Position numbers and translations under genes: made by a program | Part shown: piece after piece, positions 141 through 61,764 of the stretch | How positions within the stretch are numbered: position 1 is the first letter of the stretch | How the letters are laid out: the number at the start of each line of letters is the position of its first letter | The notes under the pieces: model-generated | The model's input: the letters and a program-made list of their open reading frames with translations, nothing else | The model's database searches: none | What the model was told of the DNA's origin: nothing | NCBI GenBank assembly: GCA_977020255.1 | Contig: CDROCS010000646.1 | Span: 806,001 to 870,000, forward strand | From: Obrimoposthia wandeli | Taxonomy: Eukaryota | Direction: 5' to 3' | DNA: 64,000 nt

Positions 141-3100
141 CTATCTTAGACTATAGCGTCCATATGCGACGGATTTGTTTTTCTCAATCCAAACCCTTTT
201 ATCGTCATAACACCTTAACGCAATTTTATCATTATACATTGTAAATAATTGATGATTACGAGATAAAATACGTGTCTGACCGGCAGTTATAATTTCATCA
301 TCATCAACATAACACTTTATGTAATGCTCATGTCTGATTTCGGTTTGTTTAAGGGAGATACCCTTAGCCCTCATACTCGTTTTCAATGAGTAGCATTTAG
401 GTTTCAGAAATACCCATTCATCATAAAGCACTGTCCCCTTGCTTTCATCTTTAAACTTCCCAATCACATTTCGATGAGAATCGTTAAATAACTCATGTGT
501 GAGCGGGTAATTACTAGTATCTAACATCTGATCTTTAATCATTTGTTTTAAGAGGACATCTTTATCTATATGCTTACAATCTAAGAAAAACGAGTCTGTA
601 TCCATTGCAACTATGTTGATATCGCAATGATATTGCTTACGATACCGGTCAAGATCACTATACTGCAGTTGGTACATACGTAGTTTAGATAAGTCCAACA
701 CAGCTTGACCAATATATGATGGTCGATCCAGACAAATTTCTTTCTTTTGCATAAATAAAAGATTGAGATTGTCGGTTATTTGGGTATGCTTCTTAAACCA
801 AGGGCTTGAAACAAGTTTAGTAAACTGACGATCATTCTTGGTAAGACGGATATCTTTACGTTTTTTAAGATTTTCCACTGTCTTACCATATATTGAGTTA
901 TTTTTGAGTTTATAAAACTCTTTATCAAATGTAGTAGTACCCTCTGCCCGTTTCCGGCTATTGATATCAATATATGTTTTAAATATAGGAGCTTGATGAA
1001 ACTTTATTGCTCTATGCACTTGTTTAATTTCTGCACCCAGAAACAAGTAAAATTGTAGTAGTTGTGAGTGTATGATGTAATTATTTTTATCCTCATGGGT
1101 CATCAACAGCTTTGAAGCTTTTGAGCCGGGAGGGGTTTCTCTATTAGGCGCAATCGGTAAGTCATCAAGTTTATCATGAATACTGATGGGTATGCGTAAA
1201 TCAATTTCCAACAAGTATCCATGTTCTTTAAGACTTAAGTCCTGCATATTACCGTGAATATCCCTCTCAGTTATAAGCTCATATACCCATGTAAAATCTG
1301 TATGTGATAACGGTTGACTCCAGGCCCAGCCATATAGGTTATTTATGTCAATGTATAGGAGGAATGTTTCATCTGTTGTTTTAACGTAATGTTTATTGAT
1401 GAAAGTCATCCCTTCCCGTATCCCTGCCTCAAACATGTTATACATTTCGCGATCATGCAATAAATCCACATCATACTCTAATGTTTTTAATGCGCTAGCC
1501 CAACTGAGACCAGGGATACTAAAGAAATTGAGTGCCTCTAGATTATCATCATCCCTTATTTCTGTCTAAAGGCCTCAAAAACATCACATAACAGATACAC
1601 GTCAAGTTTCATATACTCAAGCATGTAGTCTTTAATAGTATTATACCCTAATACGTTCCACATCATTAGGGCTTCATTATATTGTTGATCAGTGACTCAA
1701 GAAGGAAACTCAGATTTAGCGGGTAACTGTGTCTCCATAAGCCTATCAACGCCACTAATATATTCATATGGAAATACCGCCTTACTTGTTGCAATATTAG
1801 GGTTTAGGTATTGTGTAGTATAAGGACAACTTGGCAAGTATGAAACTAAGGATTCAAGACTTGACGTTGTAAAAAGGTATGAATCAATGAATTTCAATGT
1901 CCCCCTCTTCATCTCTATACGGAGGGACATGAACTTTTCACTTGATTTAGGGATAATTGAAAAGGATTTACCTTTCAAGTCGGCATATTTTAAAATATGA
2001 TGTATGTCATAACCCATAAGGTTATGAAACACCACAGGTAAAACCGGTCTCTTTGCAAACTTGCGACTTAAATTGCATTTGTTGCATGCCGCACCCAAGT
2101 ATTTACCCGTGATATGATCATGATCTCTAACCATACGATCGTTTAATTTTTTACAAAGATAGCAATTAGTGCAATCTCTAAAGTTCAACATGTCATTATT
2201 AGTAAAAACCATAGGAACATTAATACTATTTACCCAAAAATCTGCCACTTCACCATTTATCAACTCAGTTAATTTATCTACAAAGTTTTTAGCACTCTGC
2301 AGACCGTAATAACTGAAATATTGTATTGAATTATTAGTGTTGTTTTTCAAAATCATCCCTATAGATATTGGTTTATGAATGTGTTTGAAAGTATTATGTG
2401 GCTCGAGTATTGACTCAAAGTCGGCATATACAACAAATGGTGGCGCAATAGATTTAGACCAGTCGGAAAACTGACACTTGATCTCTTTAGGCATTGTAAA
2501 CAAGGTTGTTAAATCTGTATTAATATTACAATGTACCCTGTGTTTGTCATATGAAATCGTGGTTCGAAATCCAAAAAGACATTTCGCACACCAAAAGAGA
2601 CGCACATTATATTTTTGAGTATTTAAAAGTCTATTCAGGTTTGTAATCCCTGTATAGTGATAATTACCGCTCTGTTCCAACAGCAACAAGTTCACTACTT
2701 TTTCGCACTGTTTAAGACTCGTTCTATAAATAACATTAACATATGGGTTTTTAAACACTAGATGACTACTATGATGCTCTACCTTTGTAGGTTTATAGGA
2801 TAATACTGTTATCGCTATATTATTGAGTTTTTCAAACGCCTTGATGCAGTATATCCTCATATGACCAGGCTCGCATATAAGTTCATTTAAATAACGTATT
2901 TAAAACACTGATCATCAGTATTATTTACGTTCACTATAGATAGTGTTTTAGCAAGCGCAACCGGGGTTTTATAAATGATGATCCTGCTACGTTTGAAAGT
3001 GCAGTAAATTTAAAAGATACCAACAGAATTTTAAATACTGACCATCCCGAACTCATATCCTTATAAATTTCAATTTTATTGTTGAGCTCAACTGTTCTTG

Positions 3101-3836: not shown

Positions 3837-4827
3837 TGTACATAAATTACTTCCTCCACGAAGTTTAGGGTATACATGGATAATAGCCCCTGATGTAAAA
3901 CATCGCCGATAATAGCTTCCCTTTCAAAGGGCATGCCATTACGGTTAAAATAAATTTGATCAGTCGTGAAGACTTCATATAATTTATTTGCCAGATCTGT
4001 AATTTTCAGACCTGGACTAATATTAATGGGTTTGCAAGACCCTAATAAATTTGCAAATATTGTTATATCTGCTGGTAGTTTTCTCAATCTACGCAGCTTC
4101 TGACGAAATCGTTTACCTTTCCTACCTTCTGTTTTCAGTGTACTTAAATCAATATTTTGATTTTTAACTTTCTTTAACTGATTAAAATATTTTTTAAACG
4201 GGATATTTTCAAAACCCGAGTATATCTCATTTACGTCGAAATTTTCTACCGAATTAACAGGTGACCCAACAGGTGTCCCTGGTTTAAAAAGTACGGGGTA
4301 ACCTCTTGATTTAATGAACTTGTTCTGTGACCCCATTCCAGGAGTTAGACTGCCCCGCGTTACCGGGCAGCTATCGCAGTCGGGAGAATTAGATTTTATG
4401 TCCCCAAAAAGTTTATTTAAATGATTGTCATATGGAGACAAAACAACAGAATGAGAATGAGAAGATGAAGAAGAAGGAAGTAGAGAGTGAGCAGATTTCT
4501 CAGAAGATAAAAAAACTTTTGGCATTTTCTTCTTTTCATCATCATATTTTGTTGTTGACATCTTTGGAATTTTCTTCTTTTCAACATCAGAAATTGACTG
4601 TTTCCTAGTAGCATCATATTTTGCTGTTGATAACCATGGCGCAATTGATATTGGTGTGACACTGGGCATTGCTAAATTAAATTAAAAAATAATAATAATA
4701 ATCGAAAATTACCTTTCTTAACAGGTGTCGCATCCAAGTCGATATCATCATCATCATCATCATCATCCACTACAGGCTTCATCGTCCATCTTTTATTGCT
4801 GTTGAAAACAAAAATAATTTTCGACAT
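3800..4827 (-). CDS. Spliced viral gene (exons 4713-4827 and 3800-4671, 328 aa): acidic N-terminus, Lys/Ser-rich middle, basic patch, C-terminal ubiquitin-like domain
   Basis: Removing a 41-nt GT...AG intron (4672-4712) joins MSKIIF..D8..PVKK in frame to AMPSVTP. The C-terminal ITIFANLLG...DQIYF...G..FE...IGD pattern follows the ubiquitin beta-grasp pattern. Confidence 0.7.
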
Positions 4828-7351: not shown

Positions 7352-8520
7352 TTATACCTGATCTATACAACGGACATGTATGGTAAGGGATACTTTTGCA
7401 TTGTTGGAAAAACTTATTGGAACACCTGCATCGTTTCTAATATTAATTTCAATGTTTGAGATTACATTTGATGCTAAAGGGATATACATGGGTCTGTATA
7501 TTGCGATATTAACCGTGTCTCCTGGTGCTTTATTTTTATCTAACCATATAGATTTTAATAAGGGTATCATTTGACCTCCAACGTTTACAGGTTCACACAG
7601 ACTAGAATGCAAGTACATGTGATCAAACTCGTAATTTAATCGAGGTTTACCCGACCCGTTGCCCGTAAATCGTGATTTATCTAACCCTAATACATACATT
7701 AAACGTTGATCAAATCCAATATGCTCAATTCCATTCTTTAATACAAATTTTATTAGCTTATCATTATCATCCATATAAAATCTTTTAAATATGACGTCAC
7801 ATTTAGATTTAATGTATGCTACTAATGCATTTACATTATTATTATTTAAATCTTCTGTAAATACAATTTTCTTGTTGTATGAACCGGTTTTATAATGCAT
7901 ATATTGTAAATTATGTGCACCACAATCAGGTCTGATAGACGTTGATCCTTGTAAAACTCCTTTATCATCAGACTCGAAACTTTCTGAAGTTAATGTATTG
8001 AAAATGAATCCTAATTCATTTTTAGCGTCAGCATCCATCTTGATATAGAATTTTTGTTGTTGACGGATTTTATTAGTACAACATTATCTTTTTTATCAAT
8101 ACCTACACCAACTGTGATTAAGGAAATAGAAAGCTTTGCAATCTTATCTTTAGACGAGACGGTGAGTTTTGATATTTTATTAATTGTCTTTTTAATAACT
8201 TTTGGTTCTGATTTATCACCATGCAATCGCGGTTCTTTCTTTTCTACTTCTACTTGAGTATGAATTACTGATAAAGATATTTGATCAGTCTGTTGATTGG
8301 AGAATTTAATAGAATAATTAATTTCACTGCCCTTATTTAAAATAACAGGAGTGTTTGTATACGTAAATTCAGTTAATGCCGCCTCCCTTTTACCATTTAA
8401 CGTAATTGGATTCTCCCAATCTACAGTGAATAATGAAGCCATATTATTAGGTTGAGTTTTCGGACAACTATTACTCGGTAAAATCATATAGAAGTCTCTA
8501 TCTGGCTTGCTTTGATCCAT
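7352..8520 (-). pseudogene. Minor capsid protein (penton, single jelly-roll) split into two overlapping ORFs (8011-8520, 7352-8038)
   Basis: N-terminal YMILPSNS...N....F and C-terminal MYLHSSLCEP..VG..IPLL...YIPL...I.NIEINIRND.G motifs typical of Polinton mCP. Confidence 0.78.
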
Positions 8521-9513
8521 GTTGATTCAGAATATCCATGCCACTTTACGAGATATTTAGGTTTTACGGCCTTTAGATTTTACGACTTCTTGGATACGGA
8601 AAAGTGTAGGTTTATCAATTACTTGTAATTCAGGTTCATAAAATTTCCCTGTTATTACATTACAGTCATCATCAACTATAGAGTACATTACAGGATTTGC
8701 ACGTTTGTCTATTTTCTCTATCCTAAACACTTCATCACTCCAATTCTGATCAAAGTTTTTAATAAAGGGTCTACCACTAAACTTTGATATCCGAACATAA
8801 TCACCAGTCTTATGTTTGGGTTTATTAACTTTATCGACTTGATTACGACTCAGCCAAATTTCCATTGCATTTTTATCATTAATATCGACAGGTCTCAATC
8901 CGTCTAAACCTCTATGCTTACTGTGATTGTATGAAGTCATTACTTTTGGTAAAACGTCAACCCATCTTTTAATGCCTTGTGCAATAAAATGTATTTTTAA
9001 TCGATCTCTCAATGTTCTATTAAACCTTTCAACTAGGGCAGCTTTGAATTGTGAAACTACAGAGTAATGTTCAATATTTAATTTTTTAAATAAACTACCT
9101 ACATTTTTGTTGTAAAACTCTTTACCCTTATCGGTTTGCACATGTATGGGGACAGTTTTATCAATCATTATACTTAGAGCAGCCTCTATATCCTTACCTG
9201 ATTTAGATTTTACAGGTAATGCACGCGCATACCTTGTAAACACGTCAATACATGTTAAAATATACTTGTTACCATCATTGATACTTGCATATGGTATCAT
9301 TTTCATCAAATCGGCCTGCCATAAATCGTTAGGACCGCTTCTTCTGTATGCTCGAGTCGGGAACTTCCGCTTCATTGGCTTGTTTAGACTGTATGCTAGC
9401 TGATTGCTCAGCCATTTCTGAGTTTTCTTTTGACTCGATTGACTTTTTAATGATAGTTTGCCAATGCCGCTGAACCCAGCTGCGTTTTCGGGATCGTACC
9501 TTATCGTTTCCAT
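8484..9513 (-). CDS. int: Retroviral-type DDE integrase; C-terminal chromodomain reached only through a frameshift near 8557
   Basis: WQADL, QTDKGKEF and VERFNRTL. The shifted frame reads KYLVKWHGYSESTWI, matching the chromodomain of the element-3 paralog. Confidence 0.92.
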
Positions 9514-10245: not shown

Positions 10246-10350
10246 TTAACAGGTAGATAGGCTTTTCTTTTGTTTATATACAAAATCATTATTGAAAATA
10301 TCGGTTCTCACGCGTAAATCGTCTGGACATTCCTGTGTAAAATCTAAAAA
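10246..10350 (-). pseudogene. C-terminal fragment of the A32-like packaging ATPase
   Basis: Translates FLDFTQECPDDLRVRTDIFNN, matching FLNFTQSCPDDLRIVTDIFN of the element-3 ATPase. Confidence 0.85.
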
Positions 10351-10379
10351 CAGTCTTATTTGTTGTAATTAAAGATAAT
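10351..10379 (+). repeat. Left 29-nt terminal direct repeat
   Basis: Exact match to 13086-13114; contains ATTAAA. Confidence 0.95.
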
Positions 10380-10415
10380 CTTTTCTAAATTTTGGAAAAT
10401 TATCTAATTTCTTGA

Positions 10416-11237
10416 CAAGGATACCACGAAGAGGAGATACCAGATAATCAAGATACTCACACTTGTGCGAGTATTTGTACAGCCCTCAACACGTCGCAGG
10501 TCAAATCCTATCAAGAAGACGCAGAAGACGGTCTCGATCTTTTCCACGACTCGTTCGCTTCAATAAAAACAATACCAAAGCCATTGTCTTGGTCCGAGAT
10601 AACTGACGATCTAGAAGAAGATTTCAGCAAAGCAGAGTTAAATTTTGAAAAGACGGAGAGGTACTATTTAAGATCAAGGTCGGTAGATTTCGAAAAATCA
10701 ATTCAAAAAGCTCGTATGCAAGAGGATGCCGAACCAACCTTACGGGACATCATGCTCAGGCTCGATCGCATCGAAACTGAACAGAGAGCAAAAGCCAGTG
10801 TACCACTCCGACAATATGACTTGCCACGCGCCGAAACGCCGACCTAACGCAAGCAAGAGCTCCTGGAAGGAGATAACCGAACAGAGCTTAGCAAGCTCCT
10901 CCTCGAGAAGGATAGAAGATCGTGGCATGAGTTCGAGTCTCTGCTGCGTGTCCACGATCTGCTCAAGCTCGGCGACTACTTCGCCGTCGAAGAACACCTC
11001 GCCGAGCGAGCAGCAATGCTCTTCAGTTCCGTCACCATCGGGTGGGCTGCAACAGAGGCCAGAGCGTCTAATCTCGCACGCATCACGGACATATCCCCAG
11101 AAGAGAACTCTCGTTATCAGGCCAGGAAAGCAGCTGCCGCTGCCAAATCTCGACCTTTCCCACGTGGTCGAGGTAACTTCTCGCGCCGAGGCCTTGGACG
11201 CCCGCCGTTTGCTAGAGGCGCTGGCCTCCCACAGTGA
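10416..11237 (+). pseudogene. ORF1 (capsid/core- or Gag-like), one in-frame TAA at 10845-10847, Arg/Gly-rich C-terminus
   Basis: ORFs 10584-10847 and 11016-11237 share one frame, which is open from 10416 except for the single stop. It ends RPFPRGRGNFSRRGLGRPP. No ATG was found at the 5' end. Confidence 0.6.
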
Positions 11238-12903
11238 CCCATTCTACGTTCACTGGTGGCGAGATTATATGCTAGTCAGTATAATGTCGGCAGATGTCTT
11301 CAATAGACAACCTTTACCAATCCTTACTCGGGATATAATTGATGACTATTTCAATACCAATGCCATTACGCAACCACAAGCTGGGGATGGAAACAACATC
11401 TTGGAAGTCACAGGAGAAACAGAAATTGAAACGAGAAACGTCATGAACAATGACTCAAGCGGGTGGATAAACTTCCACGAAATCCGAAAAGTTAAAATGG
11501 CCCAAGACAAGCTCCAACAAGATTACTTTGAAAGCATGCCTTCGCAAACTCTCCAAATGCCAGAGGATTATAGTGACGTCGACCTAGACGGAAGGATGGA
11601 TATGCTGGCAACTAAGGGTTATGCACCCTTTGCCTCGATTAAAGCATCAAGACAAAGAAAGAGATTAAAAGTCCCAAATGACGAGAAGCAACACATCAAC
11701 GCATGTGTTCATGCTCTGCTCAAAGCCGGCATCATTGAGAAATCAACAAAAGGACCATTTTGCTCACAGGTGCGTATGGTACCTAAAGCCAACTCAAGTC
11801 TCAGAAGATTAATAGTGGATTTCAAGCACCTCACTCCACATTTGCCGCAGCTTTTCATGAAGATTCCGAATTTAGCCAACAGGCTACAGACAATTCCAAA
11901 TGATAGGCTTGCGATCAGAATTGATCTAAAAGGGGCCTTCTATCAGATTAAGATAAGGCAGGCGGCCAGGCACCTCACAAACTTTTGGAATGAGGATTGT
12001 TATTATCGTTTTACACGATTGCCTATGGGACTTCGCCAGAGTCCGGCTATTCTACAGTGGACTATCACAAGAATCCTGCAGCAGCTACAAGAAAAGTGGC
12101 CAGTTGATTTCGCACATGTCCACATCGATGATATCCTCATCGTGGCAAAACCTGAAGCAGCTATTTGGAATGAAGTCTCTAATTTCTTTAAAAAATGGGG
12201 CTTGCAAATAAATTGGAAGAAGTCACAGCTTACACCAATTTCCAAGATAGAATACTGCGGCATGCTCATTGATCTCAAGAAGCAAGAGGTCAGCATCAGC
12301 AAGGAAAAGTGGCACACTGCCGATGAAATAATCAATCAGGATCAATTTTCAGATGACGCAATTGGATATTTAAATTACGTAAGTAATGTTTTGAAATGGC
12401 CATATGTGGCAAATTATGTGCGATCAGATCTGAGAAAGTTGTGCTATTATAATCTAAAGAATTATGCGGCCACATGGAGTTGGAAAAAACAGATGGGACA
12501 AATTTGGGCAACTGATGCTACAAAGTCCACAATTGCCGTTACAAAAACGAGGCCATTCAAAATCGAGCTCACTGCCAAACTCCAGGAGGAGAATATTTAC
12601 TTGCAGGAGGCAAGAGCAGTGTTTATGGCTATGTGGAAAGCCTCAAGAGGAGATACCATCCTTTGTGACAATCTGGCTCTAGTATGGAGCATCAGAAACA
12701 GAAGAATCCCAGCAAAAGTCCAGCACTGGTGGACATTGATAGCAGTCCAAATGATGGCAACCATTAAGAAAATCAAAGTCCAATTCGTGCGAACGGAGCA
12801 CAATCCTGCCGACGCGCCAACAAGGTCGGAGGAAACGAGATCCAGATGGACGGAAGACTACGGAGTGCTGCTTTCGCTGACAATGCATCAAGCGGTGACG
12901 TGA
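10726..12903 (+). CDS. pol: Polymerase: reverse transcriptase plus RNase H, 725-codon open frame overlapping ORF1
   Basis: RT motifs RRLIVDF, IDLKGAFYQI, LPMGLRQSP, HIDD, GLQINWKKS and EYCGMLID; RNase H motifs ATDAT, LQEARA, CDN and NPADAPTR. Confidence 0.93.
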   Translation: MPNQPYGTSCSGSIASKLNREQKPVYHSDNMTCHAPKRRPNASKSSWKEITEQSLASSSSRRIEDRGMSSSLCCVSTICSSSATTSPSKNTSPSEQQCSSVPSPSGGLQQRPERLISHASRTYPQKRTLVIRPGKQLPLPNLDLSHVVEVTSRAEALDARRLLEALASHSDPFYVHWWRDYMLVSIMSADVFNRQPLPILTRDIIDDYFNTNAITQPQAGDGNNILEVTGETEIETRNVMNNDSSGWINFHEIRKVKMAQDKLQQDYFESMPSQTLQMPEDYSDVDLDGRMDMLATKGYAPFASIKASRQRKRLKVPNDEKQHINACVHALLKAGIIEKSTKGPFCSQVRMVPKANSSLRRLIVDFKHLTPHLPQLFMKIPNLANRLQTIPNDRLAIRIDLKGAFYQIKIRQAARHLTNFWNEDCYYRFTRLPMGLRQSPAILQWTITRILQQLQEKWPVDFAHVHIDDILIVAKPEAAIWNEVSNFFKKWGLQINWKKSQLTPISKIEYCGMLIDLKKQEVSISKEKWHTADEIINQDQFSDDAIGYLNYVSNVLKWPYVANYVRSDLRKLCYYNLKNYAATWSWKKQMGQIWATDATKSTIAVTKTRPFKIELTAKLQEENIYLQEARAVFMAMWKASRGDTILCDNLALVWSIRNRRIPAKVQHWWTLIAVQMMATIKKIKVQFVRTEHNPADAPTRSEETRSRWTEDYGVLLSLTMHQAVT

Positions 12904-12983
12904 TCCACTAATGTGTCTCCCATTTTTATGTCTCTTACGTCTTTTTATGGCTAAAGTTTTTTAGTTGTCTGGTATCTTTGGTT

Positions 12984-13044
12984 CACTCAGTCACATCACT
13001 TCTTGCCTACCACCTTCGGGTTCTAGGCGTGATGTGATTGGGTG
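12984..13044 (+). other. Epsilon-like bulged stem-loop (predicted RNA structure)
   Basis: Manual pairing: 16-bp lower stem (two G-U), 5-nt UUCUU bulge, 5-bp stem, 2x2 internal loop, 3-bp stem, C(UUCG)G tetraloop. Confidence 0.75.
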
Positions 13045-13051
13045 GCCTTTT

Positions 13052-13091
13052 TATATATAAGCTGGCATAAAATATAGAAATTTGCCAGTCT
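13052..13091 (+). promoter_or_regulatory. TATA box followed ~33 nt later by an initiator-like CCAGTC at the start of the right repeat
   Basis: TATATATAAG at 13052-13061; CAGTCT begins at 13086. Confidence 0.5.
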
Positions 13092-13114
13092 TATTTGTTG
13101 TAATTAAAGATAAT
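13086..13114 (+). repeat. Right 29-nt terminal direct repeat
   Basis: Exact match to 10351-10379. Confidence 0.95.
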
Positions 13115-13897: not shown

Positions 13898-14440
13898 CTA
13901 CATATCGAATTTCTCAATAGTCAAAGGATATTCAATTATACAATCTGTTTCGATTTTCTCAATAACATTAGCCTCATTATAGGGTCCTAAACATTTTGAA
14001 TGGCATATATCAGGTAATTTTATATCAATATCTGATACATGTACTTTTCCATTCAATGGTGATGTATCAAAATCGATTTTCTTGTCCATAGTTTCAATTA
14101 TTGGCACATTTGAAACATTTAACTTTAAAAGAAATGGACATGTAGGAAAAAATTTCATATGTTGCTTCATTGGTTTAAGATACCGTTCCCATTCGGATAA
14201 CGCACCTTGGCAGTATATACATTTTACTTTATCGGTTGAATCATCATCATGTTTATAAAATCCGGCTTTAGCTAAATCATTTACAGATTGTTTCCCTTTA
14301 AAATTTATAATTAATGATCTTAATCTTTCACTTTCACGTCTATATTTCCAGTGTAAAACTTTCATTCTAGAATAACCTACTTTTCGTCTAACTAAAACAT
14401 CATCAACAGTTGTATAATGAAGTATATAATCAACTAGCAT
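13898..14440 (-). CDS. iap: Inhibitor of apoptosis, BIR domain
   Basis: ERLRS...LAKAGFY...VKCIYC-x16-H-x6-C, the canonical BIR spacing. Confidence 0.92.
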   Translation of the reverse strand: MLVDYILHYTTVDDVLVRRKVGYSRMKVLHWKYRRESERLRSLIINFKGKQSVNDLAKAGFYKHDDDSTDKVKCIYCQGALSEWERYLKPMKQHMKFFPTCPFLLKLNVSNVPIIETMDKKIDFDTSPLNGKVHVSDIDIKLPDICHSKCLGPYNEANVIEKIETDCIIEYPLTIEKFDM

Positions 14441-15854: not shown

Positions 15855-15911
15855 ACTGCGATAGCTGTCTGGTTATGCGGGGCAGTCTAACTCCTGGAAT
15901 GAGGTCGCAGT
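15855..15911 (+). other. Structured motif duplicated in inverted orientation at 4325-4380
   Basis: 50/56 identity by manual alignment; folds into a three-way junction. Confidence 0.65.
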
Positions 15912-15974
15912 ACTAAGTAAATTAAATAGTTGCAAATAAAAACTTGGGACGGTCAATTGTGTTTAATTTCAAAA

Positions 15975-16223: not shown

Positions 16224-16389
16224 GTAAAGTGTCGGTTCTAAAACAATAGCACACAAAGCCCGCCCCCCAGAACAAGGCACAAGGAACAAAGCACATCTGT
16301 ATGACTAAGCGAATTCCAGATGTCCTTTGTTCCTTGTGCCTTGTTCGGGGGGGGCTTTGTTTGCTATTGTTTTAGAACCGACACTTTAC
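16224..16389. repeat. Long imperfect palindrome (~75-bp arms, 17-nt loop) near the element-1 end
   Basis: GTAAAGTGTCGGTTCTAAAACAATAGC...CACATCTG paired with CAGATGT...GCTATTGTTTTAGAACCGACACTTTAC. Confidence 0.9.
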
Positions 16390-28813: not shown

Positions 28814-29221
28814 TTGCAGATGAGCTTCTTCAACCGAGGCAACTTCAATTTTCTGCAACACAACGGCTACCTATATCGACTAGAAGTGATAAATAGACGC
28901 CTGAAGTACTACAAGTGCCGTAAGATGGGCTGTCATGGCCGCATCAGCTTGCACCTCAACAATACTCTGCGTAGCTTCCTTAAGCCACACTTGTGTATTC
29001 GCGATGAGCTTGAGACAGAGGCCTACAAAGCCTTGTCGCTGGTGCTCAACCAGGTGCCGATTTTGATCCCCTCATGCCGGGAGTTCGTGCGACAGCTGCA
29101 GGATAACAACCCGCAAGAGATCCGTGCCTATTTCCCCTCGAAGGTGGCCCTGGAGAGGCTATACCACCGCCGCACTCAGAGGGTAAAGGCTGAAGTCACC
29201 ACAGAGAACATTATCGTATGA
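28814..29221 (+). CDS. FLYWCH-type zinc-finger ORF, probably the N-terminus of a Mutator-like transposase
   Basis: FLQHNGYLY...YYKC....C.GRI...H.C; GC-richer codon usage than the surroundings. Confidence 0.65.
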   Translation: MQMSFFNRGNFNFLQHNGYLYRLEVINRRLKYYKCRKMGCHGRISLHLNNTLRSFLKPHLCIRDELETEAYKALSLVLNQVPILIPSCREFVRQLQDNNPQEIRAYFPSKVALERLYHRRTQRVKAEVTTENIIV

Positions 29222-58900: not shown

Positions 58901-59930
58901 TATTCAATTTGAGAAGCAAATATCCAAGAAGGTTCAGAGTATCCGTGCCACTTTACGTAATATTGTTTATTCTTACCACGACCTTTAGTTTCTAAAATTT
59001 CTTGTATTCGATATAGTTTAGGTTTATCAATTAATTGTAACTCTTGTTTAAAAAATTTTCCTTTGATGATGACGTTATCAATATCTTTTAAAATATACAT
59101 TATTGGATTTTGTTTATAATTAATATCATGAATTTGAAAAACCTCATCACTCCAATTTTGATTAAAATTTTTAATAAATGGACTTGTACTTATTTTTGAT
59201 ATTCGAACATAATCATCAATTTTATATTTAGATTTAACTTTCTTTTCTTTTAGATTTTGTTTCAACAAAATATCAAATTCATTTTTATTATTTATATCTA
59301 CAGGTTTTAAACCATCTAAACCTCTATGTTTAGAATTATTATAAGCATAAATAATTTTTGGTAATACATTCACCCATTTCTTATTACCTTGTTTAGTAAA
59401 ATATTTCTTTAACCGTTCTCTTAACGTTCTATTAAATCTTTCAACTACTGCAGCTTTATATTGAGAATATACTGAATAATGATTGATATTTTCAGTTTTA
59501 AATAATTTCTTAACATGTGAATTACAAAATTCTTTACCTTCATCGGTTTGGATATTTACTGGTACATCATCAACAATTAAAGATTCTATTGCATGTAATA
59601 AATCAATACCTTATTTTGATTTAACACCAACTGCCCTTGCAAAACGACTAAATACATCAATACAAGTTAAAATATACTTGAATCCATTATTTACTGAAGA
59701 ATAAGGAATCATTTCCATTAAATCCATCTGCCATAACGAATTAATACCATTAGTTTTATATGATCTAGTAGGGAATTTACGTCTTAAAGGTTTATTCAGA
59801 CTATATGATAATTCATTTCTTAACCATTTTTGTGTGTTTGTTTTTGATTGTTTGACTCTTTTTCAATTTTTCTAACCCTGTATAACCGTCTGGATCTTCT
59901 GGATTGTTCCAAATCTTTTCCATTGCAGCA
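58900..59930 (-). pseudogene. int: Integrase with chromodomain; premature stop near 59620 and a 5' frameshift
   Basis: Manual translation gives WQMDLM, QTDEGKEF, VERFNRTL and YYVKWHGYSEPSW. Confidence 0.88.
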
Positions 59931-61323: not shown

Positions 61324-61764
61324 TCAACTTTTTTTTTTAATGTATGTCATGATATCGTTAACTTGATCTTGAAAATCTAAATTTCTAAGACCTAAAATTA
61401 CGACCTTTCCAGATGTGAAAATATTTACACACAATGGATTGAAAATATTTAATCTTAAGCCTGGGAAAACCTCAGGGTCAAATGAACATGTATTACGTAA
61501 CACATTCCATAATTTAAATAGATTGATACTTTGATCTAAATTTTCACATATCGTAATTGATTGAATACCAAGTATATTTATTCTTAAAGGGTAAGAAATA
61601 TTTTTAATAGGTACCTTACATCCCATAATCCTGCATTTCTTATTTCTAAAAATAAGTATTGTATAATCTTTGGCTTTATAAACGTATTGTTCTGGTCGTG
61701 TTCGAAATTTTAATTTGGATACATCATCTAAGCAAATTCCTTTATAATTAATATTTGTTAACAT
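61324..61764 (-). CDS. TBP: Minimal TBP homologue, intronless, open 146 aa
   Basis: TNINYKG, LIFRNKKCRIMG, IQSITI..NL and FDPEVFPGL..NIFTSGKVVILG. Confidence 0.9.
   Translation of the reverse strand: MLTNINYKGICLDDVSKLKFRTRPEQYVYKAKDYTILIFRNKKCRIMGCKVPIKNISYPLRINILGIQSITICENLDQSINLFKLWNVLRNTCSFDPEVFPGLRLNIFNPLCVNIFTSGKVVILGLRNLDFQDQVNDIMTYIKKKS

What the first reader, a model, noticed from the sequence alone, without database searches (positions are those of the whole stretch)
10351..13114. Complete-looking 2.7-kb hepadnavirus-like reverse-transcribing genome nested in a Polinton
Seen: a 2735-nt unit with one capsid-like ORF overlapping an RT-RNase H ORF, and no integrase, protease, tyrosine recombinase, LTR or poly(A) tail. 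Established: PMG..SP in RT motif B, LxVDF, DAT and NPAD.P.R in RNase H match hepadnavirus/nackednavirus polymerases (HBV PMGVGLSP, DATP, NPADDPSR), whereas DIRS and Ty3 usually have PFG and DAS; nackednavirus genomes are about this size and lack an envelope gene. Some motifs (GLQINWKKS, IEYCG) look DIRS-like. Inference: an invertebrate pararetrovirus or HEART-like element near the root of the hepadnavirus lineage, endogenised as a unit-length genome.
Basis: partly seen in the sequence, partly recalled or inferred. Interest (0 to 1): 0.92.

Follow-up and report, generated by a model that had tools for sequence, protein, structure and literature searches.

The report
Small two-gene retroelement inside a Polinton
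A 2.7-kb reverse-transcribing element with only a small structural gene and a polymerase gene, bounded by a 29-base repeat that looks like the two ends of its own RNA, sits inside a Polinton-like giant transposon. It belongs to a large, barely described group of elements without any integration enzyme, and its proposed kinship to hepatitis-B-type viruses is possible but not shown.

Summary
A perfect 29-nt direct repeat (10351-10379 / 13086-13114, 2735 nt apart) bounds a GC-richer unit with an ORF1 frame (one in-frame stop) and an intact RT-RNase H ORF. There is no protease, integrase, tyrosine recombinase, LTR or poly(A). It lies between genes of a Polinton-like element.

The closest relatives are about 55 unannotated polymerases on 2.5-4 kb metagenome contigs with the same two-gene layout. 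None of eight contexts examined has a recombinase. Three assemble as closed or head-to-tail units (3140, 3159, 3565 nt), and one is integrated with an 87-nt terminal repeat.

In the window and in five relatives a TATA box lies about 30 nt before the repeat or unit junction, and a poly(A) hexamer follows within the repeat or just after the predicted start in four of the six. The repeat is therefore best read as R of a terminally redundant RNA, and the insert as an RNA-length DNA copy.

Hepadnavirus membership is not supported: HIDD instead of YMDD, no terminal-protein or core match, no epsilon, and a sub-threshold PF00336 hit that DIRS1-like elements also give. Fold searches rank caulimovirid RTs first. 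A deleted DIRS/Ngaro element is also unlikely. Motif states resemble published HEART rows, which is a lead only.

The parts
10351..10379 (+). 5' copy of the 29-nt terminal direct repeat (proposed R, the 5' end of the element RNA)
   Evidence: Exact repeat, only two copies in the window, none expected by chance.
10380..10415 (+). Leader between the 5' repeat and the start of the open ORF1 frame. The stretch 10435-10457 is 78% complementary to 12955-12977 in the 3' untranslated region.
   Evidence: (inverted repeat I2).
10416..11237 (+). ORF1 frame (Gag- or core-like by position). It is broken once by an in-frame stop and has no frameshift. The first ATG in the frame is at 10716, so the true start is uncertain. 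The C-terminal half is helical, with a conserved GW motif and an Arg/Gly-rich basic tail.
   Evidence: no Pfam family; co-linear weak similarity to the ORF1 of L011, L010, L003, L006, L001; all-helical model, pLDDT 62.6; no solved-structure relative.
10726..12903 (+). Polymerase ORF as it stands (725 codons, intact). The probable true start is the ATG at 11269, just after the ORF1 stop, giving 544 aa.
   Evidence: Most relatives start the polymerase at their own ATG 15-300 nt after the ORF1 stop; in L011 the two ORFs overlap.
11761..12264 (+). Reverse transcriptase domain (Pfam RVT_1). Motif C reads HIDD.
   Evidence: 72.5 bits; model pLDDT above 90 across the domain; CaMV and Ty3 RT are the best solved matches.
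12502..12843 (+). RNase H domain with motifs DAT ... E ... D ... NPAD. It ends 20 codons before the stop. No methyltransferase or other C-terminal domain follows.
   Evidence: PF00336 14.2 bits, below the 22.4 cut-off; no PF17917/PF17919 hit; D426 invariant; E457, D477 nearly invariant.
12904..13085 (+). 3' untranslated region, present once, holding a strong hairpin and the proposed promoter
12980..13046 (+). Long hairpin immediately upstream of the TATA box. Function unknown.
   Evidence: z-score -6.9; none of 200 shuffles folds as well.
13052..13061 (+). TATA box. It places a start site at about 13087, the second base of the 3' repeat, in an initiator-like CCAGTCT.
   Evidence: Read. The same arrangement is seen in L011, L012, L008, L006 and L001.
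13086..13114 (+). 3' copy of the 29-nt repeat (proposed R). It contains ATTAAA at 13103-13108 and ends 6 nt after it.
10429..10442 (+). First copy of a 14-nt perfect internal direct repeat (purine-rich start). The second copy is at 12645-12658.
   Evidence: D8. A repeat of 14 nt or more appeared in 6 of 300 shuffles.
12645..12658 (+). Second copy of the 14-nt internal direct repeat, inside the RNase H coding region
8557..9513 (-). Neighbour: rve-type integrase of the surrounding Polinton-like element (not part of the retroelement)
   Evidence: PF00665, 49 bits; more than 2200 relatives, many with a chromodomain.
1697..2860 (-). Neighbour: fragment with type-B DNA polymerase and endonuclease VII matches (Polinton-like element)
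13898..14440 (-). Neighbour on the other side: BIR (IAP-type) domain gene
   Evidence: PF00653, 55 bits.

Best explanation
The insert is a DNA copy, exactly as long as its RNA, of a small two-gene retroelement. ORF1 encodes a helical protein with a basic tail, and ORF2 encodes RT-RNase H with nothing else. The element belongs to a broad, mostly unannotated group that lacks protease, integrase and tyrosine recombinase.

Proposed working. On a circular or head-to-tail template, a TATA-box promoter at the 3' end starts transcription at the first bases of the repeat. The RNA passes the poly(A) signal once because it is too close to the start, runs through ORF1 and the polymerase gene, and ends after the second passage of the same stretch. 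This gives a terminally redundant RNA, R-unique-R. The element's own RT-RNase H copies this RNA. A full-length linear copy was then joined into an intergenic spot of a Polinton-like element by the cell's own end-joining, without an element-encoded integration enzyme. As a single integrated copy it lacks a promoter in front of its 5' R, so it is probably a dead end. ORF1 carries one stop; the polymerase gene is intact.

Shown: the repeat, the gene content, the relatives and their layouts, and the position of the TATA box and poly(A) hexamer relative to the repeat in several relatives.

Inferred: the start site, RNA redundancy, copying pathway, mode of priming, mode of insertion, and whether relatives are free circles or tandem arrays.
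For: Repeat and content.

Relatives: a profile search of 1.84 billion representatives gave only 94 hits at E<=1e-30. In a 90-sequence RT-RNase H tree the window groups with 57 others against Ty3-like polymerases at 100% bootstrap. Nearly all of that group end at RNase H and have a 100-300 aa N-terminal extension. Only the DIRS1-like trio (P0004, P0121, P0154) has an added C-terminal extension of 130-180 aa, matched to Dam methyltransferase in two of 78 members scanned, P0004 among them.

Two-gene layout without a recombinase: L001/L002, L003, L006, both elements of L008, L010, L011 and L012/L013.

Closed or head-to-tail units: L001 plus L002, 3565 nt; L010, 1.76 copies of 3140 nt; L012/L013, 3159 nt with a Logan contig overlapping itself by 30 nt.

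Integrated relative with the same anatomy: L011, an 87-nt perfect terminal repeat, unit 2515 nt.

TATA box about 30 nt before the repeat start or junction, followed by a poly(A) hexamer: window, L011, L012, L008. TATA box only: L006 and L001.

No repeat of the B2 kind, no target duplication, no poly(A) run. The polymerase model is confident (pLDDT 82) and all catalytic Asp/Glu are present.
Against: No transcript data were available, so the start site and RNA ends rest on consensus spacing alone. TATA-like strings are common in AT-rich DNA.

The repeat ends only 5-6 nt after the poly(A) hexamer in the window and in L011, which is shorter than the usual distance to a cleavage site. In L008 it ends 32 nt after.

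In L010 the nearest poly(A) hexamer lies before the TATA box, not after it.

Weak gapped similarity extends the window repeat about 18 nt into the 5' flank. This could instead point to recombination between a circle and a similar target.

Assembly circles cannot be told apart from tandem arrays.

In the neighbour-joining tree, the two-gene group separates from the DIRS1-like trio with only 24% bootstrap support.

ORF1 homology across the group is weak.
Confidence: 0.6

Rival explanations
1. It is an endogenised member or stem relative of the hepadnavirus order (Blubervirales). It would be a protein-primed pararetrovirus whose linear double-stranded replication by-product was captured in the chromosome.
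For: [quoted passage not shown] Relatives assemble as 3.1-3.6 kb circles. The RNase H region is of the PF00336 type rather than PF17917/PF17919: the window scores 14 bits, and 18 of 78 relatives match at E<=1e-3. Motif states HLT, FTRLP...MQ and H at the first position of motif C are shared with HEART rows of a published alignment. HEART is the published sister of the order. A 14-nt internal direct repeat and a strong hairpin exist.
Against: Motif C is HIDD, and none of the 58 nearest relatives has YMDD, which the papers call fully conserved in the order. There is no PF00242 (terminal protein) match, and the first 84 residues of the polymerase model are unstructured. ORF1 matches no core family or structure. 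No Rfam epsilon family matched. The DIRS1-like P0004 scores higher on PF00336 than the window does. Foldseek puts caulimovirid RTs first and hepatitis B virus protein P at rank 14 with similar scores. No hepadnavirus or nackednavirus name appeared in any sequence search. The hairpin and internal repeat are not at the positions that epsilon and DR1/DR2 occupy.
Confidence: 0.25
2. It is an internally deleted or non-autonomous derivative of a DIRS-order (Ngaro, PAT or DIRS1) tyrosine-recombinase retrotransposon. Ngaro elements insert into endogenous virophages of Cafeteria in a comparable way.
For: There is a precedent for GC-richer YR retrotransposons nested in AT-rich Polinton/virophage-like elements (PMC8547959). 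The window polymerase falls in the same 100%-supported non-Ty3 group as the DIRS1-like P0004, P0121 and P0154. There is no target duplication, as with recombinase-mediated insertion. Deep RT relationships among these groups are unresolved in the literature too (PMC6681497).
Against: There is no recombinase ORF or room for one. There is no inverted terminal repeat and no A1...B1A2B2 split repeat (only 7-8-mers match). There is no methyltransferase domain. None of eight relatives' contexts has a recombinase, and L012/L013 is filled almost completely by its two ORFs. The DIRS1-like trio differs in most tabulated motif states (xLN, DAS...FT; PFG in two of three) and in domain layout.
Confidence: 0.1
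3. The 29-nt repeat is not an RNA-derived R. It is either a long target-site duplication or the crossover stretch left by recombination between a circular element and a similar sequence in the Polinton.
For: The repeat is AT-rich like the host DNA (24% G+C). Gapped similarity extends 18 nt further into the 5' flank (47 columns, 85%). Elements without their own integration enzyme may depend on homology.
Against: In both the window and the unrelated-host L011 the repeat begins about 30 nt after a TATA box and ends just after a poly(A) hexamer. Chance target choice would not produce this. In L012, TATA and AATAAA lie in the same order and spacing on a closed unit with no host DNA. Among known retroelements, duplications of 29 and 87 nt would be unusual (from general knowledge).
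Confidence: 0.12

Closest known systems
HEART retroelements of Ixodes ticks (Gong and Han 2018; RT alignment rows in the supplement of PMC12691608)
   Same: Genomic RT elements without a known integration enzyme, whose way of moving is described as unresolved (PMC12440569). Short motif states in the RT agree with the window group: HLT.HLP after motif 1, D.xxAFY, FTRLP.G.R...MQ, and H or Y at the first position of motif C.
   Different: Only two alignment rows were compared, by eye. No score, tree or gene map could be computed here. The HEART rows shown have N at the last position of motif C where the window has D. HEART termini and ORF1 are not known to me.
Proto-nackednaviruses and nackednaviruses (Blubervirales without an envelope gene)
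   Same: Size of 2.7-3.5 kb. A structural gene plus a polymerase gene only. TATA box and poly(A) signal at a short terminal redundancy. Circular assemblies in metagenomes. RNase H of the PF00336 type.
   Different: The window lacks YMDD, a detectable terminal-protein domain, core motifs, an epsilon match and canonical DR1/DR2 placement. In most relatives the genes abut rather than overlap. The window copy is integrated.
DIRS-order retrotransposons (DIRS1-like, PAT, Ngaro, VIPER), including Ngaro elements nested in Cafeteria endogenous virophages
   Same: Gag-like ORF followed by RT-RNase H. No protease or integrase. No target duplication. Replication thought to pass through a circle. Nesting of a GC-richer retroelement in a Polinton/virophage-like element. 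The RT is in the same non-Ty3 group.
   Different: No tyrosine recombinase, no inverted or split terminal repeats and no methyltransferase. The element is 2.7 kb rather than 4.5-6 kb. Most tabulated motif states differ from the DIRS1-like polymerases found here.
Caulimoviridae (plant pararetroviruses)
   Same: Best structural and solved-structure matches for the RT-RNase H: CaMV RT 8r0s, and caulimovirid polymerases at E 4e-24 to 1e-20. They use a terminally redundant RNA made from a circular template with the poly(A) signal in R (general knowledge).
   Different: No movement protein, no protease and no recognisable tRNA primer site. The genome is a third of the size. Sequence identity is only 14-18%.
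Chromosomal integrations of hepadnaviral double-stranded linear DNA
   Same: A roughly unit-length copy with a short terminal redundancy, inserted without a viral integrase, without target duplication and without its own upstream promoter (general knowledge of hepadnavirus replication).
   Different: This is an analogy of outcome only. The priming and strand-transfer steps that define that pathway were not testable here.

Membership tests
Blubervirales (Hepadnaviridae, nackednaviruses, proto-nackednaviruses) | Polymerase with an N-terminal terminal-protein domain (Pfam PF00242 / IPR000201) that primes DNA synthesis | tested here: not met
   No PF00242 match in the window polymerase or in any of 78 relatives. 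Residues 1-84 of the model have pLDDT below 50. A very divergent domain cannot be excluded.
Blubervirales (Hepadnaviridae, nackednaviruses, proto-nackednaviruses) | YMDD in RT motif C, stated to be fully conserved (PMC11551314) | tested here: not met
   The window has HIDD. Among the 58 nearest relatives: YLDD 24, HIDD 15, HVDD 6, HLDD 4, YMDD 0.
Blubervirales (Hepadnaviridae, nackednaviruses, proto-nackednaviruses) | RNase H of the viral polymerase C-terminal type (Pfam PF00336) | tested here: inconclusive
   The window scores 14.2 bits, E 0.029, below the 22.4 cut-off. Several relatives pass (P0035 31.5, P0146 28.8, P0008 25.2). So does the DIRS1-like P0004 (32.9), so the match is not specific to the order.
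Blubervirales (Hepadnaviridae, nackednaviruses, proto-nackednaviruses) | Core protein with the conserved core motifs and helices | tested here: inconclusive
   No Pfam family and no solved-structure relative for the ORF1 pieces or for a nine-member ORF1 profile. The single-sequence model is helical but of low confidence (pLDDT 62.6). The papers report only 10-12% identity even among accepted members.
Blubervirales (Hepadnaviridae, nackednaviruses, proto-nackednaviruses) | Epsilon stem-loop and the DR1/DR2 direct repeats | tested here: inconclusive
   No Rfam match at E<=10. A strong hairpin (12980-13046) and a 14-nt repeat pair exist, but outside the redundancy and 519 nt apart on the circular map.
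Blubervirales (Hepadnaviridae, nackednaviruses, proto-nackednaviruses) | Small circular genome giving a terminally redundant RNA, with TATA box and poly(A) signal at the redundancy | tested here: met
   The window has a TATA box at -31 of the repeat start and ATTAAA inside the repeat. Relatives form closed or head-to-tail units of 3140-3565 nt. This feature is shared with caulimovirids, so it does not define the order on its own.
Blubervirales (Hepadnaviridae, nackednaviruses, proto-nackednaviruses) | RT groups inside the HEART plus Blubervirales clade in a joint phylogeny | not testable with these tools
   No such polymerase came back from the searches. Comparators that are animal-virus sequences could not be brought in.
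DIRS order (DIRS1-like, PAT, Ngaro, VIPER) | Tyrosine recombinase gene | tested here: not met
   No third ORF and no room for one in 10351-13114. None in eight relatives' contexts.
DIRS order (DIRS1-like, PAT, Ngaro, VIPER) | Inverted terminal repeats with an internal complementary region, or split direct repeats A1...B1A2B2 | tested here: not met
   Only a simple 29-nt direct repeat is present. Nothing beyond 7-8-mers links the stretch before the 3' repeat to the stretch after it. By contrast, L004 (P0004) has 111-nt inverted repeats.
DIRS order (DIRS1-like, PAT, Ngaro, VIPER) | RT-RNase H related to DIRS-type polymerases | tested here: inconclusive
   Same non-Ty3 group at 100% bootstrap. 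In the tree, however, the DIRS1-like trio is a separate 100% clade outside the other 55 (the split has only 24% support) and has different motif states.
HEART retroelements | RT sequence affinity to the Ixodes HEART elements | tested here: inconclusive
   Motif-level agreement with two rows of a published alignment, compared with counts in my alignment. No score or tree was possible.
LTR retrotransposons (Ty3/gypsy, Metaviridae) | Long terminal repeats, protease and DDE integrase; RT within the Ty3/gypsy clade | tested here: not met
   No LTR, protease or integrase. Separated from 32 Ty3-like polymerases at 100% bootstrap. No PF17917/PF17919 RNase H match.
Polinton/Maverick (the surrounding element) | Protein-primed type-B DNA polymerase and rve integrase in one dense gene array | tested here: met
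   PF03175 fragment at 1700-2860 and PF00665 at 8560-9513, both on the minus strand, with packed ORFs on both sides of the insert. The integrase has more than 2200 relatives, many with a chromodomain. Capsid, ATPase and protease genes and the terminal inverted repeats were not tested.

The most novel reading that the evidence does not exclude
The window element and its roughly 55 unannotated relatives form an unrecognised lineage of two-gene pararetrovirus-like elements. They exist both as 2.5-3.6 kb circles and as RNA-length chromosomal copies, have no integration enzyme, and sit between the tick HEART retroelements and the hepadnavirus order. That would give HEART-type elements a replication scheme and give the origin of hepatitis-B-type viruses a broad, samplable sister group.
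Probability: 0.25. Interest if true: 0.85.

Novelty: new variant of a known kind. Interest (0 to 1): 0.6.

Why it matters
Reverse-transcribing elements are usually sorted by how they enter DNA: integrase, tyrosine recombinase, endonuclease, or not at all (pararetroviruses). This element has a complete-looking gene set and none of these enzymes. Yet it is integrated, and its ends coincide with the predicted ends of its RNA.

Together with relatives that assemble as closed 3-kb units, this points to a group that lives like a pararetrovirus and leaves RNA-length copies in chromosomes. The published HEART elements, said to be the nearest non-viral relatives of hepadnaviruses, have no known way of moving. 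If the group found here includes or adjoins HEART, its anatomy supplies a concrete hypothesis that sequence data alone can test.

It is also a second kind of retroelement seen nested in a Polinton/virophage-like element, after the Ngaro elements of Cafeteria.

Tried and rejected
- Exact-protein look-ups of the window polymerase and of the Polinton integrase found nothing, so the source organism stays unknown.
- A last protein search with the integrase gave more than 2200 unnamed environmental relatives and no host name.
- Scans for related loci with profile A2 in viral contigs and in metagenome contigs found no confirmed relative.
- The word-indexed protein search with a 14-member profile returned mainly Ty3/gypsy-type proteins and no hepadnavirus, nackednavirus or DIRS name.
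- The Rfam scan of the element found nothing. The bacterial-type promoter and terminator scan was irrelevant and empty.
- Foldseek against viral and solved structures did not discriminate between caulimovirid, Ty3, retroviral and hepadnaviral polymerases.
- The ORF1 piece modelled alone gave a low-confidence helical model, so I did not send it to a fold search.
- The third ORF of the DIRS1-like L004 could not be confirmed as a recombinase by Pfam or by solved structures. It was therefore not used as a probe.
- The HEART paper itself is not held in the library, and a text search for its element names gave nothing useful.
- A tRNA-type primer site was considered. Only a 7-nt partial resemblance to the pattern I had in mind from memory occurs in the 3' untranslated region, and I dropped it.
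- An alternative genetic code as an explanation for the ORF1 stop was rejected, because the neighbouring Polinton ORFs are long under the standard stops.

While first reading the ORF1 frame I noted the position of its in-frame stop in my private reasoning, and I used the bounds of the two pieces as tool references. I also recalled from memory a few short motif patterns as leads (a tRNA primer site, and DIRS and Ty3 motif patterns). None of these is repeated or used as evidence in this report.

Full report
**What is in the window.** A perfect 29-nt direct repeat lies at 10351-10379 and 13086-13114, start to start 2735 nt. It occurs nowhere else in the 64 kb, and no copy appears in 100 shuffles even with three mismatches allowed. 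The enclosed DNA is 44.5% G+C, against about 32% on both sides.

One uninterrupted ORF runs from 10726 to 12903. Its product has a reverse transcriptase domain (RVT_1, 72.5 bits). This is followed by an RNase H region whose only family match is a sub-threshold hit to the hepadnaviral polymerase C-terminal family PF00336 (14.2 bits, cut-off 22.4).

A second frame is open from 10416 to a stop at 11237 and is interrupted once by an in-frame stop. It has no frameshift, and its first ATG is at 10716. The unit contains no protease, integrase, recombinase, methyltransferase, LTR or poly(A) run, and no target duplication is visible.

The insert sits in an intergenic gap between closely packed minus-strand genes. 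These include a type-B DNA polymerase fragment and an rve integrase upstream and a BIR gene downstream. That fits a Polinton-like element.

**Relatives.** A word-indexed search found only seven proteins. The three informative ones were P0001 (39% identity), P0002 (30%, also 725 aa) and P0004 (23%). A profile of the window polymerase with P0001 and P0002, scored against 1.84 billion representatives, gave 43,603 hits. Only 94 of them reached E<=1e-30, and after the two seed proteins the best was 5.5e-65.

I extracted the RT-RNase H core of 90 hits and built a neighbour-joining tree (406 columns, 100 bootstraps). One split has 100% support. On one side are 32 Ty3/gypsy-type polymerases. On the other are 58 sequences: the window, a 100%-supported DIRS1-like trio (P0004, P0121, P0154) and 54 mid-sized polymerases. 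Inside the 58, support is poor. Window plus P0002 has 54%, and the 55 without the trio have 24%.

Architecture separates the sequences more clearly. Nearly all of the 55 stop at the end of RNase H and carry 100-300 residues before the RT core. The trio alone carries a C-terminal extension of about 130-180 residues, which in P0004 matches Dam methyltransferase. P0004 and P0154 also start almost at the RT core.

**Genomic contexts of the relatives.**
- P0004 sits on L004 with 111-nt inverted terminal repeats and a third ORF. This is the classic DIRS1 layout.
- Every other context shows an ORF1 of 150-420 aa followed by the polymerase and nothing else: L001/L002, L003, L006, both elements on L008, L010, L011 and L012/L013.
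- L001 and L002 join head to tail into a 3565-nt unit.
- L010 holds 1.76 copies of a 3140-nt unit.
- L012, from a Tara Oceans metagenome, holds 1.9 copies of a 3159-nt unit, and the Logan contig L013 of the same sequence overlaps itself by 30 nt.
- L011 is an integrated copy in an 8.5-kb contig, bounded by an 87-nt perfect direct repeat 2515 nt apart.

The lack of a recombinase is therefore the normal state of this group, not a deletion in the window copy.

**The repeat as the ends of an RNA.** In the window a TATA box (13052-13061) places a start at about 13087. This is the second base of the 3' repeat, within an initiator-like CCAGTCT. The repeat contains ATTAAA (13103-13108) and ends 6 nt later.
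- L011 shows the same picture in an unrelated, GC-rich host: TATATATA about 30 nt before the 3' repeat, and AATAAA 5 nt before the repeat's end.
- On the closed unit L012, TATAAATA is followed about 30 nt later by the probable start and about 20 nt after that by AATAAA.
- L008 has TATAAATA, an initiator-like CAGT about 30 nt on, and AATAAA inside its terminal repeat.
- L006 and L001/L002 have a TATA box about 30 nt before the end of the contig or the junction.
- L010 is less clear, because its nearest poly(A) hexamer precedes the TATA box.

The simplest reading is that the promoter lies at the 3' end of the unit. Transcription on a circular or tandem template then gives an RNA with the short stretch R at both ends. 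The window insert and L011 would be DNA copies with exactly the extent of that RNA.

A single integrated copy has no promoter in front of its 5' R, so it is probably inert as a source of full-length RNA. All of this is inference from sequence; no transcript data were available.

**Other features of the non-coding parts.** A long hairpin lies just before the TATA box (12980-13046, z-score -6.9). Comparable structure is seen near the TATA box in L006 and L001, but not in L011 or L008. A 14-nt perfect internal repeat (10429-10442 and 12645-12658) is matched in length by only 6 of 300 shuffles. The leader is 78% complementary over 23 nt to the 3' untranslated region. I cannot assign functions to these features.

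**Testing the hepadnavirus reading.** Papers list the marks of the order: a terminal-protein domain, YMDD, an RNase H domain, core motifs, epsilon, DR1/DR2, and TATA and poly(A) signals at a short redundancy.
- Motif C is HIDD, and none of the 58 nearest relatives has YMDD.
- No terminal-protein family match exists in the window or in 78 relatives. The first 84 residues of a confident polymerase model (pLDDT 82, pTM 0.79) are unstructured.
- ORF1 matches no family and no solved structure, alone or as a nine-member profile. Its single-sequence model is helical but of low confidence.
- Rfam finds no epsilon.
- The PF00336 match is not specific. The DIRS1-like P0004 scores 32.9 bits, and 18 of 78 relatives match at E<=1e-3. 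This agrees with a published link between RNase H of recombinase retroelements and hepadnaviruses.
- Foldseek against viral models ranks caulimovirid polymerases first (E 4e-24 to 1e-20) and hepatitis B virus protein P at rank 14 (E 2e-19, 20% identity). Against solved structures, the CaMV and Ty3 RTs lead.
- No sequence search returned a hepadnavirus or nackednavirus name.

Membership of the order is therefore not supported. Only the genome logic is shared, and caulimovirids share it too.

In my alignment the 55 two-gene-type polymerases mostly have DAT (42 of the 58), NPAD (45 of 58), an H or Y at the first position of motif C, RLP before the conserved glycine, and ...Q at the end of motif B. 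The DIRS1-like trio and the Ty3-like set have DAS, xLN and ...FT or ...FE. Two of the three DIRS1-like polymerases have PFG.

The motifs therefore mark a real group, although NPAD also occurs in the DIRS1-like P0004.

Two rows of HEART elements from Ixodes, printed from a published alignment, show HLT.HLP, D.xxAFY, FTRLP.G.R...MQ, and SYIDN or SHLDN at the corresponding places. The published tree puts HEART next to the hepadnavirus order. I could not bring those rows into a computation, and the HEART paper is not held.

**Testing the DIRS reading.** No recombinase, no inverted or split repeats, no methyltransferase, and different motif states and layout from the DIRS1-like polymerases found here. 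The nesting of a GC-richer retroelement in a Polinton/virophage-like element has a precedent in the Ngaro elements of Cafeteria. Those are 6 kb, carry a recombinase, and have A1...B1A2B2 repeats.

**State of the genes.** The polymerase gene is intact, with all catalytic acidic residues of RT and RNase H present. ORF1 is broken once by a stop codon and has no frameshift. Its start is uncertain, because the frame is open for 100 codons before the first ATG. The ORF1 proteins of the group share only a weak co-linear pattern: a helical stretch, a GW motif and an Arg/Gly-rich tail.

**Host.** Unknown. A weak FLYWCH hit, a TBP-domain ORF and the BIR gene are compatible with an animal. The Polinton integrase has only unnamed environmental relatives.

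**Verdict.** This is a real, nearly intact, integrated copy of a two-gene retroelement. It comes from a large and essentially unannotated group that lacks any integration enzyme and has a pararetrovirus-like promoter-R-poly(A) arrangement. It is not a demonstrable hepadnavirus relative and not a deleted DIRS element. Its deep placement, possibly near HEART, remains open.

Noticed in passing
L003 (NCBI GCA_039182315.1, JBCDCG010001485.1), whole 2153-nt contig: The closest relative of the window polymerase (P0001, 39% identity), with an upstream ORF1, sits in a genome bin labelled Chloroflexota bacterium. A eukaryote-type RT-RNase H element there is most likely a mis-binned contig.
   Followed up: partly
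window 8557-9513 (-): The Polinton-type rve integrase has more than 2200 relatives (up to 65% identity) on environmental contigs of up to 20 kb, many with a chromodomain. None is named, so the host lineage stays open.
   Followed up: partly
window 4309-4380 and 15855-15927; 16224-16389: A 73-nt inverted repeat pair (86%) brackets the region that holds the insert, and a 166-nt palindrome lies just beyond it. These may be ends or inner repeats of the Polinton-like element. The polymerase-B fragment at 1697-2860 lies outside this pair.
   Followed up: no
window 10338-10379 versus 13068-13114: With gaps, similarity extends about 18 nt to the left of the 29-nt repeat (47 columns, 85%). The 5' flank thus faintly resembles the stretch between the TATA box and the 3' repeat. 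This is either chance in AT-rich DNA or a trace of recombination.
   Followed up: partly
L011 7441-7894 versus 8092-8545; L008 3383-5800 (-): In two unrelated contigs a second element copy lies tail to tail immediately after the 3' repeat of the first. In L011 it is an inverted 454-nt copy of the same polymerase. In L008 it is a different two-gene element. This is either an insertion preference or an assembly artefact.
   Followed up: no
L001 3676-3760 versus L001 111-135 and 311-373; L002 63-160: After the first 25 nt downstream of the predicted start site, L001 continues at a point 175 nt further on than L002 does. This is a variant junction of unknown meaning (deletion variant, processed form or misassembly).
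   Followed up: partly
window 28814-29218 (+), 58903-59373 (-), 61327-61764 (-): Weak FLYWCH zinc-finger match (20.6 bits), weak chromodomain match, and a clear TBP-domain ORF (46.9 bits). The long stretch from 16 to 56 kb is very AT-rich (21-35% G+C) with few ORFs.
   Followed up: no
window 13898-14440 (-): A BIR (inhibitor-of-apoptosis type) domain gene lies in the dense minus-strand gene array next to the insert, apparently as cargo of the Polinton-like element.
   Followed up: no
   Followed up: no
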